From Dendrobates tinctorius (taxonomy: Eukaryota), in contig NW_027361868.1 of the NCBI RefSeq assembly GCF_039654945.1, positions 6,696,001 through 6,760,000 on the forward strand: a stretch of 64,000 nucleotides of DNA. The letters are read 5' to 3'. Every line of letters begins with the position of its first letter. Within the stretch, counting starts at the first letter, position 1. Shown here piece by piece: positions 1 to 43,339 of this stretch. A model generated the notes under the pieces. That model was not told the DNA's origin, searched no databases, and saw only the letters and a list, made by a program, of their open reading frames with translations. Both the position numbers and the translations under genes were made by a program.

Positions 1-138
1 GGGCCCAATATGAAATGAAAGCTGCACTGTGATTGGTTGCTAAGAGCAACAACATGGATTCTTAAAACTCCCCTATCATTTATATTTACTGTCTAACATG
101 GTGAAAAACTGTTTATGCTATATTTTAACTACGGCCCC

Positions 139-613
139 TGTTGTGAGCTCATTTTCTCACCAAAAATGTCCCAACACGTCTGATAGGAAAAACGGCCCTG
201 AAGTCACTAGACTTCAAAATCCCTATATCAGCACTCCGATATATTCTGAAGACAGAGCAAAAGAGATTTAACCGATCAGGGACAAAAATGGAAATTCAGC
301 AGAGCTCCAGCTGGGGCTGGCAGAACACAAAACTAAGCAAATCAGACAAAATCTCATGGAACAATAACAGAGCAAAACTTAGCTTTAGAAGACAGGAACT
401 GAACTGGAGGCCAGAGCTCAGAGCAGAGAAATCACCAGCAACCCTACAGGGCGTCAGCTGCCTTATATCCACTCAGAGATTCCGGATGTCCAATCGCAAT
501 CCACCTGTTCAGGTGACAGGTTTCTCCCATCCAAATCAGTTTCACCACCTCCTTTCACCAGCAGAGGGAGTTCATCAGACATCAAAGGTGATCGAGAAAA
601 TGAGCTCACAACA
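139..613 (-). mobile_element. Truncated LTR (U3-R part) bounded by perfect 20-bp terminal inverted repeats; 6-bp TSD GGCCCC
   Basis: Starts TGTTGTGAGCTCATTTTCTC (139-158) and ends GAGAAAATGAGCTCACAACA (594-613); GGCCCC at 133-138 and 614-619; interior 160-600 aligns by eye to the solo LTR at 31120-31650. Confidence 0.8.
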
Positions 614-647
614 GGCCCCATAATGGAGAAGAAAGGAACAGCTGTTA

Positions 648-859
648 GGCCCGAGTTCAGATGGGCGTATGTCACGGTCTATATATGGACCACAATTCCC
701 AAACTGAGCGCAGATTTCCCTACCCAAATTTACAGCCAAATGCAATGACTGGAATGATCACCTGACCTGAACTTACAGAAACGTTTTGCGGCTGTAAGTT
801 TGGGTTAGAGACCTACGGTCCATATACGGACAGTGAAATACGCCCGTCTGAACATGTCC
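648..859. mobile_element. PIF/Harbinger-type MITE
   Basis: Imperfect TIRs GGCCCGAGTTCAGATGGGCGTAT / ATACGCCCGTCTGAACATGTCC; TTA on both sides. Confidence 0.6.
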
Positions 860-5866: not shown

Positions 5867-6804
5867 GAGGGGTCGTCCACTGCTAGGATAAGGCCGGTTT
5901 CACATTCGCGCTTTTGAGCGCAGCGACGGCCTGCGCACGGCCGCCGCTAAGCCCCGCCCCCTGCCCCGCCTCCACCGGTATCTCCGCCTCCGGGCGCATG
6001 ACGTTGCATGCGTCGTGCGTCCCCTATCTTCATCACAGAGGGCGCAGGCCGTGCCCTTCTGCGCACAGTCTGCGTTTGGCGACGCATGCGTCCTTTTGAC
6101 GGTGCGCCGAGCACAACCAAAATGCAACAGGTTGCGTTTGGCGCTGCTCGGCGCACCGTCAAAAGGACGCATGCGCCGCCAAACGCAGACTGTGTGCAGA
6201 CTGCGCACGGCCTGCGCCCTTTGTGATGAAGATAGGGGACGCACGACGCATGCAACGTCATGCGCCTGGAGGCGGAGATACCGGTGGAGGTGGGGCAGGG
6301 GGCGGGGCTTAGCGACGGCCGTGCGCAGGCCGTCGCTGCACTCAAAAGCGCGAATGTGAAACCGGCCTAACCCCTACTTGAACTAAATGTTTGGCCCGAT
6401 AAAGTACAAAAACCTATACTCAAGTCCTGTGCCAGCACCGTTCAAGCGGTGTCAGCACTCGCAGTTCCGGAGCTCTGGTCGAATGGCACGTGGTGCCCGG
6501 CGCGCAATCAGCGCCGGCTTCACTGTCCCCGCCTTCGTACGGATTGAAAATGAAGAGGAAGTCAGAGATCAGCTGCAGCATGGACTTCCTCTACAAGTTC
6601 AATCGTACAAAGATGGGGATAGTGACCCCAGCGCTGATTGGACACCTGGCTCATGTATCACAACAACTGCACGGGACCCCGGGACCATGAGTGTTGACAC
6701 CGCTGGAACGGCGCCATCACGTCAGGTTAGTGTAGGCTTTTTTATTTTGTCAGGGCCAAACATTTAGTTTAAGAAGTGATTGCCCTAGTAGTGGACCACC
6801 ATTT
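5867..6804. mobile_element. Kolobok/T2-type MITE whose left TIR is interrupted by the palindromic MITE at 5892-6367
   Basis: GGGTCGTCCACTGCTAGGATA(A)CCCTACTTGAACTAAATGTTTGGCCC matches the reverse complement of 6753-6800 once the insert is removed. Confidence 0.6.
5892..6367. mobile_element. Near-perfect 476-bp palindromic PIF/Harbinger-type MITE, TSD TAA
   Basis: GGCCGGTTTCACATTCGCGC...GCGCGAATGTGAAACCGGCC; TAA at 5889-5891 and 6368-6370; mirror ORFs on the two strands are nearly identical. Confidence 0.9.
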
Positions 6805-7589: not shown

Positions 7590-8001
7590 CATCTACACTC
7601 CATACACCTCGTACACACATGGCTCCGCTCCGTACACCTCGTACACACACGGCTCCGCTCTGTACACCTCGTACACACGTGGCTCCACTCCGTACACCTC
7701 GTACACACACGGCTCCGCTCCGTACACCACGTACACACACGGCTCCGCTCCGTACACCTCGTACGCTCCGTACACCTCATACACACACTGCTCTGCACTG
7801 TACTCCTCGTACACACGGCTCCGCTCTGTACACCTCGTACACACGACTCCGCTCTGTACACCTCGTACACACGTGGCTGTGCTCCATACACCTCGTGCAC
7901 ACATGGCTCTGCTCTGTACACCTCGTACACACACAGCTCTGCTCCATACACCTCGTACACACATGGCTCTGCTCCGTACACCTCGTACACACACGGCTCC
8001 G
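7590..8001. repeat. 30-bp minisatellite (GGCTCCGCTCCGTACACCTCGTACACACAC)n, left half
   Basis: About 13 visible units; follows a hAT-like terminus CAGTGACGCAACTACAAAGTTATGGGCCCC at 7516. Confidence 0.9.
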
Positions 8002-9703
8002 TGTTTTGAACTCTCTTAATCTGACTTTTGAGGCAGGGCTCCCTCTGGTGGATACTGCTGGTAGTGGAGCTGGTCAGGCTGATGGTAATCCAATAGCTGT
8101 AGAGGATGATTGCAGGAGTGGGTGTGGTGACTTGGAGCATATAAGCGAGCAAGATTCTCACAGTTGCTGCCGGTGATTGACTTCTTTCTGTGCATTTTTG
8201 AGGATATCTGTCTCCTGCCTGATCCTGCATTTTTCAGCTTAGTTTCATTTGCTAAATCCTTTGCATCTGATTTTGCCTTGCTGTTAGGGTTCAGCCTGCT
8301 CCCCCTGGGGCTGCTGGCTCCTGCCCTGTATGTTACACCTTGTGTTTGTTTGCTCAGTCTCCTGCTGTATTAGCCTGTTGCTTGCTGCCAGTTCACACAT
8401 GAGTGCTGATATAGTGTGTCACATGTGCTGTCCTGGGTGACACGACCCGCAGGCCGGTAACTCAAACAACAAGACCAACACGTGTAACTGTCCTGTGTGA
8501 CACAACCCGCAGGCCGGTAACTCAAACAACAAGACAAGAGGGAAGGGGAAACAGTTACAACAGTGGGCCCTGCAAAAGGGAACGGGGACGTGGAGACCTG
8601 CTGCACTCCCCTGAGGCAGTGTCCCTAAGCACTCCTAGCGATCCCTATACAGGCTCCTCACCTGTCGCCGAGCAGGATACCTGAGTCCCTAACTCACCCT
8701 GCACCTATCCCTTTCTAGGGAACTGGGTGATGCAGACACTACTCCCACTGCTGCACTAATACACACAAAGGAAAAAAAGGGAAAAACACCAAAACACTTA
8801 TCTTGCTCTGCTGCAGTCATCAGACAGCAGAGTGCAGCACCAGATAAACTTTTACAGTGGCTCAACACCTCAGAGCCAGCTGCCACTTCACCATCTCACT
8901 CTGCTGGGGACACCGGGTAGGCAGAGTTCACACCAGTTTCAGTAGTGGCTCTACATCTCAGAGCCAGCTGCTCTCTTCACCATGGTTGGAATCCACAAAG
9001 GAAACGCTGCTATCACCAACCCCTGCTGATAGACCAGCTGACCTCATATAGCAAAAGAGGAGTGGACACATCAGCAGGGACCAAAAACATGTAATAACCC
9101 CGGTGACCACCGGGGGCAAAAGGTAAAACAAAGAAAGCATCAGATGTAATGACACTTGTGGCCACCGGGGGGCAAAAACCCATATTAAGCCCCCAGAAGC
9201 CTGAAAATAAAGGTTTACATGAGGGAACCCAGACTCTGACACGGATCCAAGAATTGGACCGTGACATAGTGGGGGCGAGGTTGTGTATGTAACCTCAGTA
9301 TTTTTGTACATCAGACGTGTTGGAATTTTTAGGGTTTTTGCGTGATTGCAGACAGTGCCTTTCCTGTCCTGTCCTATCTAGACAGTTTGGGCCCCATCAT
9401 TTGCTCATTCTATTTTCTGTCTGTGTTTGTGCTTCATCTTGTCTCACCGACAATATATGTTGGGGGCTATCTAGTCTTTGGGGGTTCTGCTCCGGGGCAG
9501 TTTAGATTTCACCTTTCTTACTTCAGGCTTAGTTATCTCTCCGGCTGTGCTGAGGCATCTAGGGCATCGTAGGTACGCCCCATGGCTACTGCTAGTTGTT
9601 TTTTTTAAGATTAGGGGTCTGCAAACCGCTGAGTGACCAACCACTCTGGTTTTCTGGTGGCATAAACTATTACTCCATCCTCCTCGGTGACCCATTCATA
9701 ACA
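8002..9703 (+). mobile_element. Solo LTR (TGTTTTGAA...CATAACA), 6-bp TSD GCTCCG, interrupted by a second solo LTR
   Basis: TG..CA ends; GCTCCG at 7996-8001 and 9704-9709; removing 8417-9271 gives a continuous reverse-complement match to 30745-31653; TATA-like TATAA at 8140. Confidence 0.8.
8417..9266. mobile_element. Solo LTR (TGTCACA...GTGACA), 5-bp TSD TAGTG
   Basis: TAGTG at 8412-8416 and 9267-9271; TGTCAC/GTGACA inverted termini; internal 60-bp direct duplication (8428-8535). Confidence 0.85.
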
Positions 9704-10100
9704 GCTCCGCTCTGTACACCTCATACACACGGCTCTGCTCCGTACACCTCCTACACACATGGCACTGCTCCATGCACCTCGTACACATGTGGCTCCGCTC
9801 CTTGCACCTCGTACACACACGGCTCCGCTCCATGCACCTCCTACACACATGGCTCCGCTCCATACACCTCCTACACACATGGCTCCGCTCCATGCACATC
9901 GTACACACACACGGCTCCGCTCCGTGCACCTCGTACACACACGGCTCCGCTCAGTGCACCTCGTACACACGCGGCTCCTCTCCGTGCACCTCGTACACAC
10001 ACGGCTCCGCTCTGTGCACCTTGTACACTCACAGCTCCGCTCCATGCACCTCGTACACACAGCTCCGCTCCGTACACCTCGTACACACAGCTCTGCTACA
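9704..10100. repeat. 30-bp minisatellite, right half
   Basis: Same unit as 7590-8001; resumes in register after the LTR. Confidence 0.9.
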
Positions 10101-11755: not shown

Positions 11756-13361
11756 CAGTGGGGAAAAAAAGTATTTAGTCAGTCAGCAATAGTGCAAGTT
11801 CCACCACTTAAAAAGATGAGAGGCGTCTGTAATTTACATCATAGGTAGACCTCAACTATGGGAGACAAACTGAGAAAAAAAAATCCAGAAAATCACATTG
11901 TCTGTTTTTTTTTCATTTTATTTGCATATTATGGTGGAAAATAAGTATTTGGTCAAAAACAAAATTTCATCTCAATACTTTGTGATATATCCTTTGTTGG
12001 CAATGACAGAGGTCAAACGTTTTCTGTAAGTCTTCATAAGGTTGCCACACACTGTTGTTGGTATGTTGGCCCATTCCTCCATGCAGATCTCCTCTAGAGC
12101 AGTGATGTTTTTGGTTTTTTGCTTGGCAACACGGACTTTCAACTCCCTCCAAAGGTTTTCTATAGGGTTGAGATCTGGAGACTGGCTAGGCCACTCCAGG
12201 ACCTTGAAATGCTTCTTACGAAGCCACTCCTTCGTTGCCCTGGCGATGTGCTTTGGATCATTGTCATGTTGAAAGACCCAGCCACGTTTCATCTTCAATG
12301 CCCTTGCTGATGGAAGGAGGTTTGCACTCAAAATCTCACGATACATGGCCCCATTCATTCTTTCATGTACCTGGATCAGTCGTCCTTGCCCCTTTGCAGA
12401 GAAACAGCCCCAAAGCATGATGTTTCCACCACCATGCTTTACAGTAGGTATGGTGTTTGATGGATGCAACTCAGTATTCTTTTTCCTCCAAACACGACAA
12501 GTTGTATTTCTACCAAACAGTTCCAGTTTGGTTTCATCAGACCATAGGACATTCTCCCAAAACTCCTCTGGATCATCCAAATGCTCTCTAGCAAACTTCA
12601 GATGGGCCCGGACATGTACAGGCTTAAGCAGTGGGACACGTCTGGCACTGCAGGATCTGAGTCCATGGTGGCGTAGTGTGTTACTTATGGTAGGCCTTGT
12701 TACATTGGTCCCAGCTCTCTGCAGTTCATTCACTAGGTCCCCCCGCGTGGTTCTGGGATTTTTGCTCACCGTTCTTGTGATCATTCTGACCCCACGGGGT
12801 GGGATTTTGCGTGGAGCACCAGATTGAGGGAGATTATCAGTGGTCTTGTATGTCTTCCATTTTCTAATTATTGCTCCCACAGTTGATTTCTTCACTCCAA
12901 GCTGGTTGGCTATTGCAGATTCAGTCTTCCCAGCCTGGTGCAGGGCTACAATTTTGTTTCTGGTGTCCTTTGACAGCTCTTTGGTCTTCACCATAGTGGA
13001 GTTTGGAGTCAGACTGTTTGAGGGTGTGCACAGGTGTCTTTTTATACTGATAACAAGTTTAAACAGGTGCCATTACTACAGGTAATGAGTGGAGGAAAGA
13101 GGAGACTCTTAAAGAAGAAGTTACAGGTCTGTGAGAGCCAGAAATCTTGATTGCTTGTTTCTGACCAAATACTTATTTTCCACCATAATATGCAAATAAA
13201 ATGAAAAAAAAACAGACAATGTGATTTTCTGGATTTTTTTTTCTCAGTTTGTCTCCCATAGTTGAGGTCTACCTATGATGTAAATTACAGACGCCTCTCA
13301 TCTTTTTAAGTGGTGGAACTTGCACTATTGCTGACTGACTAAATACTTTTTTTCCCCACTG
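11756..13361 (-). mobile_element. Full-length Tc1/mariner transposon (IR/DR type; probably Passport/Eagle-Glan-like clade)
   Basis: 1606 bp; ~200-bp near-identical TIRs starting CAGTGGGGAAAAAAAGTATTTAGTCAG; TA at 11754-11755 and 13362-13363; clade assignment is from memory only. Confidence 0.95.
11972..12994 (-). CDS. Tc1-family DD34E transposase, 340 aa, uninterrupted
   Basis: Paired-like HTH N-terminus, GAPRK linker, WSDETK, FQHDND and [11 protein letters not shown]; 34 residues between the second D and E. Confidence 0.95.
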
Positions 13362-29815: not shown

Positions 29816-30744
29816 CTCATACAGGCAGGGGTGCAGAGTACACATAGATGCATTTTTGCACTGTACTCCCACAGCAAGGGGTGCAGAGTAGACACAGAGG
29901 ATTTTTTGCACAGTACTCCCACAGGCAGGGGAATAGAGTACAAGGAGGTTTTTTTGCACAGTACTCCTACAGACAGGGGTGCAGAGGACACACAGCTTTT
30001 TGCACAGTGCTCATACAGACAGGGGTGCAGAGTAATCAGAGGCTTTTTTTGCAAAGTAGTCTCACAGGCAGGGATACAGTGTACACAGAGGCTTTTTGGC
30101 ATAGTACTACCACAGGCAGGGTTGCAGAATACACAGAGGCTTTTTTGCACAGTACTCTGACAGGAAGGGGTGCAGAGAACACAGAGGCATTTTTGCACAG
30201 TATTCCCATGGGCAGGAGTGCAGAGTACACACTGTGGCTTTTGAGAACAGTACTCCCAGAGGCAGGGGTGCAGAATACCCAGAGGCATTTTTGCACAGTA
30301 CTCCCACAGGCAGGGGTGTAGAGTACAGACTGAGGCTTTTGAGAACAGTACTCCCACAGGCAGGGGTGCAGAGGACACGCAGAGGCTTTTCAGCACAGTA
30401 CTCGTACAGACAGAGGTGCAGGGTACACAGAGGCTTTTTTGCACAATACTCCCACAGGCATGGGTGCAGAGTACACAGAGGCTGTTTGCACAGTACTCAC
30501 ACAAGCAGGAGTGCAGAGGACACAGAGGCTGTTTTGCACAGTACTCCCACAGGCAGGGGTGCAGAGTAGACACAGTGGCTTTTTGGAACAGTACTCCCAC
30601 AGGCAGGGGTGCAGAGTTGACACAGAGGCTTTTTGGAACAGTACTCCCACAGGCAGGGGTGCAGAGAACACGCAAAGGCTTTTTGACACAGTACTCATAC
30701 AGATGGTTACAAAGTACACACAGAGGCTTTTTGGCACAGTACTC

Positions 30745-31653
30745 TGTTATGATTGGGTCACCGATGAGGAAAGCAAGACCAAGCTAAGCCAGAGAGGTTG
30801 GTAACTAAGCGAATTGCAGACCCCTGATCCTTTCCACACAACTAGCAGTAGCTGTGGAGCATACCTACGATGATCCTAGACGCCTCGACACAGCCGGATA
30901 ACTAAATAAGCCTAAAGCAAGAAAGGGGAAATCTAAACTGCCCCAGAGCAGACCCCAAAGGAATAGATAGCCCCCAAACATATATTGTCGGTGAGACAAG
31001 ATGAAAACACAAATGCAGGTAGGAAAATAGACTGAGCAAATGAAGGGGCAAACACTAACTAGACAGGACAGGACAGGAAAGGAAAGACTCTGTCTGCAAT
31101 CACGCAAAAAACCCTGGTTCAAAAAATGCCCAACACGTCTGATAGAAAAATACTGAAGTCACTAGATTTCGCCCACTATATCAGCACTCTGGTATATTCT
31201 GAAAGCAGAGCAAAAAGAGGCCAATCTAATAAGGGACAAAAACAAACTGGCACAAGCAGTAACATATGGATGGAGATTCAGCACAGCCCCAGCCGGAGCT
31301 GGCTGAACACACAAAACTGAAATAGACAAAACCAGATCAAATGTGAACAATAGCAAAAGAACACTTAGCTGAGCATGCAGGGACTGAGCTGGAATCTAAG
31401 ACCTCAGGAGGCAGGAAAAATCACCAGCAGGGATAGAGGGAGTCGGCTGTCTTAAATCCAGTCAGAAACTCCAGATCTCCAGTCATGCTCCTCATTATCA
31501 GTTGGCAGGCCTCTGTTAATTAGATCAGCTCCATTACCTCCAGTAACCACCAGAGGGAGCCCGGAAAGAGAACTCGTGACCCCTCTGTCAATACAATCAG
31601 CTCCACTACCTTCACTAGTAATCAGAGGTAGGCCAGAAAGCGATTTAACAACA
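30745..31653 (-). mobile_element. Solo LTR, 909 bp, 6-bp TSD GTACTC
   Basis: TGTTATGA...TAACAACA; GTACTC at 30739-30744 and 31654-31659; same family as 8002-9703 and 139-613. Confidence 0.85.
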
Positions 31654-42022: not shown

Positions 42023-43339
42023 ATGGCAGAACAGCAGCAAATTTTGCAGTGTGTGCGACAGCTCGAGGCTCGCTTGACTACCCTTGAGAGGGCTCTCGCA
42101 GCTGCGCAGGCCACGGATGCTGCTGTTCAGGCACTCACAGATGCGGTCGGGCATATGTCCATGTCCACCCTTGCGCCGACAGTTACCCGCCTCCCGTTGC
42201 CCGATAAATACTCTGGGGATGGCGCCTCCTGCAGGGGTTTCATCAGCCAGTGCTCAATACACCTGGAGCTGCTGCCTGCGCAATTCCCTACAGAGCGGGC
42301 CAAGGTAGCCTTTATTATTTCTTTACTGTCGGGCAAGGCGTTGGAGTGGGCTACGCCCCTGTGGGAGCATGGTGACCCCGAGATTCGGACCGCTGCTCAC
42401 TTGCTAGCAGCCATCAAGCAAGTTTTTCTCGGTCCCCGGGTCACCCATGACACCTCTCTACAGTTGCTGGCCTTGTCTCAGGGATCCCTCCCGGTTAGCC
42501 AGTACGCTCTCCGTTTTCGGACACTGGTGTCCGAGTTGGAGTGGTCCGACAAGGCGTTGATCCCTGTTTTCTGGAGAGGTTTAGTGGAGCACGTTAAGGA
42601 TGCTCTCTCCACTAGAGAGATTCCTACCTCTCTGGAGGAGCTAATTTCCATCTCCTCCCGTATCGACCTCCGTTTTTCGGAGCGCGGTATGGAGCGTGCT
42701 CACTCCAAACGGAGAGGTACTCCGGCTCCCAACTTCTTTGAGCCTCTGGAGCTGCCCGAGCCAGAGGTTCTACCTCCCGAGCCCATGGAAGTGTCTCGCG
42801 TCATTTCTGAGACACGTCCGGCTCAAGAGTCGATATGCGGTTGTCACCATCTACACGCTGCTTCCCAGGAACACAGCGCCCCGCAATGCTCTGACTGTGA
42901 GTCGGTAGGCGAGACTTTTGTCCCTCCTCGCCAGCGGCCAAAAATTCTCGCGTGGACACACGCGTCCAATGCGGACGGCCACCGTGGCTATATGCAGACC
43001 ACGAAGTCTCTGGCCGGATCGTATTGGTGGCCGCACAGGGCTCGGGACGTGAAAAAATTAATTCGGGCATGCACCTTATGTGCTCGGGACAGTCTTCCCG
43101 AACGGAGTGTGGCGACGGCCGTCGACACACGGCGGCATTCTCCTAAAACTCCTGCTCCCATTATCTCCCGGGTATCCCTCCTGACACCTGGCGACCTGAC
43201 CTCCGCTGATACTGTCCGTATGTCCCGGTTTTCGGTTTCATCTACCAGGACATCAGGCTCACCTTTTAACGAGTCTGAGGCCTGTGCCACTGTCGGGCAT
43301 AGGCTGGTGGATCGGAGGGTTCAGCGAGGGGGGCCCTAG
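42023..43339 (+). CDS. 438-aa Gag (PEG10/RTL/sushi-like capsid) fused in frame to the integrase HHCC zinc finger and pol C-terminal remnants
   Basis: N-terminal coiled coil; LPLPDKYSGD...CRGFISQC...FPTERAKVAFIISLLSGKALEWA; LSQG...V.QYA.RFR; EPMEV; then ILAWTH......GH.G...T......YWWP....DV......CTLCA; ORF spans PBS to PPT. Confidence 0.9.
   Translation: MAEQQQILQCVRQLEARLTTLERALAAAQATDAAVQALTDAVGHMSMSTLAPTVTRLPLPDKYSGDGASCRGFISQCSIHLELLPAQFPTERAKVAFIISLLSGKALEWATPLWEHGDPEIRTAAHLLAAIKQVFLGPRVTHDTSLQLLALSQGSLPVSQYALRFRTLVSELEWSDKALIPVFWRGLVEHVKDALSTREIPTSLEELISISSRIDLRFSERGMERAHSKRRGTPAPNFFEPLELPEPEVLPPEPMEVSRVISETRPAQESICGCHHLHAASQEHSAPQCSDCESVGETFVPPRQRPKILAWTHASNADGHRGYMQTTKSLAGSYWWPHRARDVKKLIRACTLCARDSLPERSVATAVDTRRHSPKTPAPIISRVSLLTPGDLTSADTVRMSRFSVSSTRTSGSPFNESEACATVGHRLVDRRVQRGGP

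What the first reader, a model, noticed from the sequence alone, without database searches (positions are those of the whole stretch)
139..613. An LTR turned into a TIR-bounded mini-element: the U3 attachment end appears at both termini
Seen: a 475-bp unit with perfect 20-bp inverted ends and a 6-bp TSD (GGCCCC). Its body is the promoter-containing half of the LTR family also found at 8002-9703 and 30745-31653, but the normal distal ~375 bp (ending CATAACA) is replaced by an inverted copy of the element's own first 20 nt. The junction has GGTGA microhomology (GGTGAGAAAATG vs GGTGATCGAGAAAATG). The TSD length equals that of the normal copies. Inference: this molecule was integrated as such by the family's integrase, for example after a fold-back template switch during plus-strand synthesis. 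That would be an integrase-mobilised, MITE-looking LTR derivative that repeat classifiers would call a DNA transposon.
Basis: partly seen in the sequence, partly recalled or inferred. Interest (0 to 1): 0.72.

Follow-up and report, generated by a model that had tools for sequence, protein, structure and literature searches.

The report
Half LTR with two identical ends
A 475-bp piece of a very abundant frog retrotransposon LTR carries the same integrase-recognised end on both sides and was inserted in one event; it is a rare fossil of a mis-made or mis-repaired DNA copy, not a new kind of mobile element.

Summary
Window 139-613 is a 475-bp unit with perfect 20-nt inverted ends and a GGCCCC duplication on each side. 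A contig from a closely related species (about 2% diverged) runs from 132 straight to 614 with a single GGCCCC. That is the exact empty site.

The body (159-613) belongs to a hugely repeated LTR family. Other copies continue leftwards at 159 with ordinary LTR sequence, so the 20-nt cap is not part of the normal LTR. By k-mer depth the cap is at least about 60 times rarer than the right end.

The two in-window "family" copies are only 59-69% identical to the body. All three copies have 6-bp duplications.

Best reading: a linear DNA with the same LTR end at both termini was inserted by the family's integrase. The inner joint lies where the body's end can pair with the sequence next to the terminus, which points to an annealing-guided switch.

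- Whether this happened before integration, or by trimming of a longer fold-back afterwards, cannot be decided.
- Whether the doubled end is U3 or U5 is also open.
- Nothing shows an amplifying MITE-like family.

The scan reported a comparable fold-back LTR insertion elsewhere in this genome (s1-382816).

The parts
133..138 (.). Left copy of the 6-bp target-site duplication GGCCCC
   Evidence: The empty site in organism B has one copy; the joint 132->614 has 6 letters that fit either side.
139..158 (+). 20-nt cap: an inverted copy of the element's own right terminus. It replaces the far part of the LTR.
   Evidence: perfect match to the reverse complement of 594-613; other family copies read ...GCAATCACGCAAAAACCCT before 159 instead.
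159..613 (-). 455-nt LTR body, collinear with the family from the shared terminus (613) inwards.
   Evidence: 69% identity to 31122-31559; word depth around 1e5 against 3 for unique DNA in X1.
159..170 (.). Inner joint patch ACCAAAAATGTC. Its complement can pair with 8 of 12 positions of 578-589, including the 3 terminal base pairs.
   Evidence: only 2 of 396 possible truncation points pair as well. This test was chosen after seeing the data.
578..593 (.). GACATCAAAGGT plus GATC next to the native terminus. This is the presumed landing site of the switch. GATC is the 4 nt missing from the cap side.
   Evidence: the arms align as 18 nt, a 4-nt gap, TCACC, 4 mismatches, ATGTC.
594..613 (+). Native LTR terminus ...GAGAAAATGAGCTCACAACA
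   Evidence: many family contigs stop at 613/614.
614..619 (.). Right copy of the target-site duplication GGCCCC
461..470 (-). Conserved TATA-like motif: GGATATAAGG on the minus strand, CCTTATATCC on the plus strand.
   Evidence: these columns are invariant across the three copies. TATAAG at position 147 of the minus strand.
30745..31653 (+). Reference solo LTR (909 bp), same orientation as the mini element, duplication GTACTC. It ends in a tandem duplication of about 55-70 nt.
8002..9703 (-). Reference solo LTR in the opposite orientation, duplication GCTCCG. It is 852 bp plus a nested 850-bp LTR at 8417-9266.

Best explanation
A short linear DNA made from one LTR of a very abundant frog LTR-retroelement family carried the same terminal attachment sequence, in inverted orientation, at both ends. 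The family's integrase joined both ends to the chromosome in one concerted, 6-bp-staggered reaction. This happened after the split from the sister species.

I think the molecule was made before integration. A nascent DNA strand that started at the LTR terminus was 455 nt long. Its 3' end annealed to positions 25-36 of a strand of the same polarity (its own 5' part or a second copy). It was then extended to that strand's 5' end, with a 4-nt slip between the two TC repeats. This added the 20-nt inverted cap.

Twenty nucleotides is about the length of DNA end that retroviral integrase covers, so the cap was enough for integration.

The product has no primer-binding site, no polypurine tract and no second LTR, and integrase cannot excise it. 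It is therefore a dead-end insert.

Shown: the insertion, the duplication, the empty site, the identical ends, the LTR origin and the rarity of the cap. Inferred: integrase as the agent, the pre-integration timing and the strand involved.
For: - Perfect 20-nt inverted ends, with 0 expected by chance.
- TG...CA termini flush with a 6-bp duplication, the same length as in two other copies of the family.
- Exact empty site with a single GGCCCC in organism B, whose flanks differ by about 2%.
- The body is collinear with the LTR family from the shared terminus to about position 455.
- Other copies continue at 159 with normal LTR sequence (loose ends in X8 and X5).
- The joint sits at one of only 2 of 396 truncation points whose 3' end pairs well next to the terminus.
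- Retroviral integrases make 4-6-bp duplications, protect about 20 bp of each end, and integrate 487-bp to 1.5-kb mini-donors and pairs of identical oligonucleotide ends in vitro (PMC11054761).
- The normal two ends of this family already share TGTTNTGA.
Against: - Only one locus was seen, and no reads span the left junction.
- The joint is not a clean product of the proposed pairing: 4 nt (GATC) are missing.
- The pairing statistic was chosen after seeing the data.
- A single strand with a 20-nt panhandle has only one duplex end, so a second strand must still be made. Mutual extension of two annealed 3' ends would do this, but that is conjecture.
- The same local similarity would also guide a slippage deletion after integration.
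Confidence: 0.5

Rival explanations
1. Integrase inserted a larger same-end structure. This was either a long fold-back of two head-to-head LTRs, or two separate DNA molecules each contributing one like end. Host replication slippage or end-joining later removed the centre and all but 20 nt of one arm.
For: - The scan reported a 1.56-kb head-to-head LTR insertion elsewhere in this genome (s1-382816), so such substrates occur here.
- Long palindromes are known to be unstable (general knowledge).
- In vitro, two identical ends from separate donors are integrated together (PMC11054761).
- The 8/12 similarity between 159-170 and the sequence beside the terminus would be a direct repeat in such a palindrome, which suits slippage.
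Against: - A slippage or microhomology deletion between the ACC repeats should keep GATC, and it is absent.
- Keeping exactly an integrase-footprint-sized 20 nt would be a coincidence under random trimming. Under pre-integration selection it is a requirement.
- No longer allele is known.
Confidence: 0.32
2. It is an ordinary solo LTR of a short-LTR subfamily whose two natural ends happen to be a 20-nt inverted repeat. That would make it multi-copy.
For: - Some retroviral LTRs have terminal inverted repeats of 10-15 nt (general knowledge).
- The depth data do not exclude up to a few hundred capped copies.
Against: - Word depth in the 121-160 bin is about 0.2-0.6% of the next bin. It is at least about 60-fold below the depth at the right terminus.
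- Spill-over from normal copies aligned from 159 can account for that depth.
- Normal copies continue past 159 with LTR sequence.
- The two in-window LTRs have a different far end, TGTTATGA....
Confidence: 0.07
3. It is a class II (cut-and-paste) non-autonomous element moved by a transposase that recognises the 20-nt inverted repeats.
For: The unit has TIRs and a duplication and is small. An intact Tc1-like transposase gene lies in the window.
Against: - The ends are the LTR family's own TG...CA terminus.
- The 6-bp duplication equals that of the LTR copies, whereas Tc1 elements make TA.
- The body is LTR sequence.
- The capped form is rare.
Confidence: 0.03
4. The left cap is an assembly artefact.
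For: No listed contig of the source sample spans 81-160.
Against: - The cap's outer base abuts the left duplication copy exactly.
- The empty site in another species removes exactly 475 + 6 bp. An assembler could not produce that by error.
Confidence: 0.02

Closest known systems
Solo LTRs and truncated LTR-retroelement insertions
   Same: LTR sequence, TG...CA termini, and a duplication of the family's length.
   Different: A solo LTR arises by recombination between two LTRs and has two different ends (U3 and U5). Here one end is replaced by an inverted copy of the other, and the insert entered in that form or as a fold-back.
Self-primed (fold-back) strong-stop DNA and other aberrant reverse-transcription products of retroviruses
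   Same: A nascent strand uses a strand of its own polarity as template, which gives an inverted duplication ending at the strand's 5' end.
   Different: Those products are known mainly from in vitro reactions and unintegrated DNA (general knowledge; papers listed). Here the product is integrated in a germline, with a duplication and an empty site. The arms are very unequal: 20 against 455 nt.
Fold-back LTR insertion reported by this scan (s1-382816, same genome)
   Same: Two like LTR ends facing outwards, read as a mis-made reverse-transcription product inserted by integrase.
   Different: That one has two full LTR arms joined at a tRNA-Ser primer-binding site. This one has a 20-nt arm, no primer-binding site, and a joint inside the LTR. 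I could not check whether the LTR family is the same.
MITEs (miniature inverted-repeat transposable elements)
   Same: Small, non-coding, with perfect TIRs and a duplication.
   Different: The ends and body come from an LTR. No evidence of multiple copies with these ends, no matching transposase, and a 6-bp duplication as made by the LTR family.
DIRS-type elements with inverted terminal repeats
   Same: A retroelement bounded by inverted repeats.
   Different: DIRS elements use a tyrosine recombinase and make no duplication (general knowledge). This insert has a 6-bp duplication.

Membership tests
Integrase-inserted LTR-retroelement DNA | Termini 5'-TG...CA-3' flush with a short target-site duplication of family-typical length | tested here: met
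   TGTTG...CAACA with GGCCCC on both sides. The two other copies have 6-bp duplications. The empty site is exact.
Integrase-inserted LTR-retroelement DNA | Sequence homology to an LTR family | tested here: met
   69% identity over about 440 bp to 30745-31653. The alignment is collinear. The family is very abundant in reads of two species.
Integrase-inserted LTR-retroelement DNA | Two different ends (U3 left, U5 right) | tested here: not met
   Both ends are the same 20-mer. The normal far end, TGTTATGA..., is absent.
Integrase-inserted LTR-retroelement DNA | Identity of the doubled end (U3 or U5), from a copy with a primer-binding site or polypurine tract | not testable with these tools
The indirect cues conflict.
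MITE / class II TIR element | Terminal inverted repeats plus a duplication | tested here: met
MITE / class II TIR element | Many copies sharing both ends | tested here: inconclusive
   The cap region is at least about 60-fold less deep than the right terminus. This is compatible with one copy, and up to a few hundred cannot be excluded.
MITE / class II TIR element | An autonomous transposase-encoding relative with the same TIRs | not tested
   None in the window. The genome could not be searched.
TRIM / small LTR retrotransposon | Two direct LTRs flanking a primer-binding site and a polypurine tract | tested here: not met
   The unit has no internal direct repeat of LTR size. It is one LTR fragment.
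DIRS-like | No target-site duplication | tested here: not met
   A 6-bp duplication is present.

The most novel reading that the evidence does not exclude
Same-end LTR molecules are a recurrent product in this frog. The hyper-abundant LTR family would regularly generate short, integrase-competent DNAs capped by an inverted copy of one attachment site. That would seed TIR-bounded, promoter-carrying inserts that repeat annotators file as DNA transposons. The capped form seen here may exist at tens to hundreds of loci.
Probability: 0.12. Interest if true: 0.6.

Novelty: new variant of a known kind. Interest (0 to 1): 0.36.

Why it matters
It is direct germline evidence that an LTR-element integrase will insert a DNA carrying two copies of one attachment end, and that about 20 nt of that end suffice. 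In-vitro work with mini-donors and identical oligonucleotide ends predicts this, but it is rarely documented in genomes.

Such inserts also warn annotators that a TIR plus a duplication is not proof of a class II element.

With the fold-back case found elsewhere in this genome, the frog may be a good place to measure how often reverse transcription or repair goes wrong in this way.

As a single locus it is a curiosity rather than a new mechanism.

Tried and rejected
- Metagenome scans for a conserved LTR core pattern found nothing. The scan for the 20-mer gave two hits, L001 and L002, whose context is unrelated, so they are chance matches.
- I used the 111-aa spurious ORF (288-620) as bait in the protein word search, hoping to reach other LTR copies. 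It found nothing.
- Looking up earlier findings by sequence gave a blank.
- Rfam at gathering threshold over the whole window gave no match.
- Four literature searches for integrated same-end LTR products found no direct precedent in the held library.
- I tried to fix the LTR orientation from TATA and polyadenylation motifs, composition and conservation. There is no canonical polyadenylation signal on either strand and the cues conflict.
- An in-window scan for other TG...CA inverted-repeat units with 4-6-bp duplications found only this element and a palindrome at 5960-6300.
- Autointegration was rejected. It would join the terminal CA to internal DNA, whereas here the terminal bases face the host DNA.
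- Two independent nested insertions were rejected. Both outer ends share one duplication and one exact empty site.

Full report
**What is there**

Window 139-613 is a 475-bp unit. Its first 20 nt, TGTTGTGAGCTCATTTTCTC, are the exact reverse complement of its last 20 nt. With up to three mismatches the 20-mer occurs nowhere else in the 64-kb window, and shuffles give none. GGCCCC lies directly outside both ends, at 133-138 and 614-619.

**Insertion and empty site**

Public runs holding this stretch come from two organisms. Earlier notes of the scan call the genome a frog.

In run X8 (organism B) one 765-nt contig matches 15-132 and then continues at 614-1200. The joint 'skips 481' and 6 letters fit either side. 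So B has the uninterrupted site with a single GGCCCC. That contig differs from the window by 15 substitutions and 2 gaps over about 705 nt, roughly 2%, so B is a close relative.

The insert is therefore exactly 475 bp plus one duplicated hexamer. It entered after the two lineages separated, or it is still polymorphic.

A contig of X1 (organism A, probably the assembled sample) covers 585-1200 without a mismatch and confirms the right junction. No listed contig spans the left one. The left cap nevertheless cannot be an assembly error, because its outermost base lies flush with the left duplication copy that the empty site predicts.

**What the body is**

BLASTN and a MAFFT alignment show that the unit is collinear with the solo LTR at 30745-31653 (same strand, 69% identity). 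It is more distantly collinear with the LTR at 8002-9703 (opposite strand, about 59-64%). The collinear stretch runs from the shared terminus (...ACAACA at 613) inwards for about 455 nt.

Those two copies carry 6-bp duplications, GTACTC and GCTCCG. They are relatives rather than members of the same subfamily.

The reads show closer relatives in very large numbers. Summed word depth over 161-600 is about 1e5 in X1, where unique flanks have depth 3, and it is similar in organism B.

At 159-162 other copies leave the mini element and read ...CTGCAATCACGCAAAAACCCT(ACC) to the left (loose ends in X8 and X5). That is the normal LTR continuation, as seen at 31095-31117. Normal copies do not contain the inverted 20-mer.

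**How rare is the cap**

Depth in the 121-160 bin is 0.2-0.6% of that in the next bin. Even if all of it lay on 139-160, it would be about 60-fold below the depth at the right terminus. Organism B, which lacks this insertion, shows similar residual depth, so most of it is spill-over from normal copies aligned from 159.

The data fit a single capped locus. Because only contigs could be laid, they cannot exclude up to a few hundred capped copies.

**Which end is doubled**

This could not be settled.

- A conserved TATAAG reads on the minus strand, 147 nt from that end.
- The region between the motif and the end is variable and is duplicated in one copy.
- The far part of the LTR is the better conserved: 78% against 64% between the two reference LTRs.

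For the opposite orientation (the doubled end is U5):
- The plus strand is strongly A-rich in all three copies (A 35-37%, T 17-20%), as sense strands of retroelements usually are (general knowledge).
- The TATA-like motif would then sit about 150 nt from the LTR's 3' end, which is the usual layout.

No canonical polyadenylation signal is present on either strand. No copy with a primer-binding site or a polypurine tract is available.

The main inference does not depend on this point. The family's two normal ends already share TGTTNTGA.

**The inner joint**

Aligned against each other, the two arms match for 18-20 nt. A 4-nt gap follows (GATC, present only beside the native terminus), then TCACC, four mismatches and ATGTC.

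The ACCAAAAATGTC stretch on the cap side is ordinary LTR body, because the reference LTRs and the reads have it too. So the body's last 12 nt (read on the strand that starts at the terminus) can pair with positions 25-36 of a like strand at 8 of 12 positions, including the three 3'-terminal bases.

Of 396 possible truncation points in the body, only two pair this well. I chose this test after seeing the junction, so it is suggestive only.

A primer annealed there and extended to the template's 5' end would add GATC plus the 20-mer. The observed product lacks GATC. A 4-nt slip between the two TC dinucleotides would explain that, but it is an extra assumption. Only GGT is added information.

**Mechanism**

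Firm points:
- One concerted insertion took place.
- It made a 6-bp staggered cut, the same length as in the family's other copies.
- The inserted DNA had termini that are both the same LTR attachment sequence.

Retroviral-type integrases make 4-6-bp duplications and protect about 20 bp of each end. In vitro they integrate 487-bp to 1.5-kb mini-donors and pairs of identical oligonucleotide ends (PMC11054761). So a 475-bp donor with a 20-nt cap is a plausible substrate, and 20 nt is about the minimum one would expect to pass.

How the inner joint arose is inferred. I favour an annealing-guided strand switch during DNA synthesis before integration, at odds of 0.5. Mutual extension of two nascent strands annealed by their 3' ends would give a fully double-stranded product directly.

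The main rival, at 0.32, is that a longer same-end structure was inserted and then trimmed by slippage or end-joining. That structure could be a fold-back like the one this scan reported elsewhere in the genome (s1-382816), or two molecules each giving one like end. The same local similarity would guide that deletion, and the missing GATC is equally awkward for it.

The other rivals are unlikely for the reasons given under rival explanations: a regular short-LTR subfamily (0.07), a class II element (0.03) and an artefact (0.02).

**Consequences**

The insert has no primer-binding site, no polypurine tract and no second LTR, so it cannot be reverse-transcribed as an element. Integrase does not excise. 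The 'integrase-mobilised MITE-like family' is therefore not supported. The unit is a dead-end fossil that merely looks like a MITE.

It does carry the family's conserved TATA-like region. I have no expression data.

**Comparison and novelty**

The unit works like known aberrant reverse-transcription products (self-primed strong-stop DNA, inverted duplications in defective proviruses), combined with normal integration. It fails the solo-LTR definition because it has two like ends. Membership of MITEs is unproven because copy number could not be shown. It fails the DIRS definition because it has a duplication.

My searches of the held literature found no direct description of such an integrated, unequal-armed, same-end LTR fragment. 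That library is incomplete.

I rate it a new variant of a known kind with modest interest (0.36). It would rise to about 0.6 if a genome-wide count showed that such capped LTR fragments recur.

**Limits**

- Only Logan contigs, not raw or long reads, could be laid, and only once.
- The genome itself could not be searched.

Noticed in passing
window 8417-9266: An 850-bp unit, TGTCAC...GTGACA, is nested inside the solo LTR 8002-9703 and flanked by TAGTG on both sides (5-bp duplication). It is probably a solo LTR of another family. It holds a roughly 50-bp tandem duplication at 8430-8535.
   Followed up: partly
window 7598-8001, 9704-10089 and 29821-30744: Both reference solo LTRs sit inside tandem arrays. 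One array has a 30-bp unit (CTCCGTACACCTCGTACACACACGGCTCCG) and one a 48-bp unit; the 48-bp array appears to resume after 31653. This family may tend to land in satellites, or to be retained there.
   Followed up: no
window 31517-31653: The solo LTR 30745-31653 ends in a tandem duplication of its last 55-70 nt or so, including what looks like a decayed copy of the LTR terminus (and the sequence). Earlier notes on this genome describe LTRs that grew by duplicating their end (s1-382839).
   Followed up: partly
window 5960-6300: A near-perfect palindrome of at least 340 bp (GC-rich arms, centre near 6130). The TIR scan flagged it with a 33-nt perfect stretch. Its nature is unknown.
   Followed up: no
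window 11972-12994 (-): An uninterrupted 340-aa Tc1/Sleeping-Beauty-type transposase ORF with HTH_SB, HTH_Tnp_Tc3_2 and DDE_3 domains. It is possibly a young copy.
   Followed up: no
window 42023-43339 (+): A 438-aa ORF joins a Ty3/Gypsy capsid-like Gag domain directly to an integrase H2C2 zinc-binding domain. This looks like an internally deleted Gypsy element.
   Followed up: no
window 655-853: An inverted repeat with 50-nt arms (78% complementary) lies 40 bp to the right of the insert. The stretch is a low-copy repeat in the reads, about 10 times unique depth. The left flank 1-80 belongs to a very high-copy repeat.
   Followed up: no
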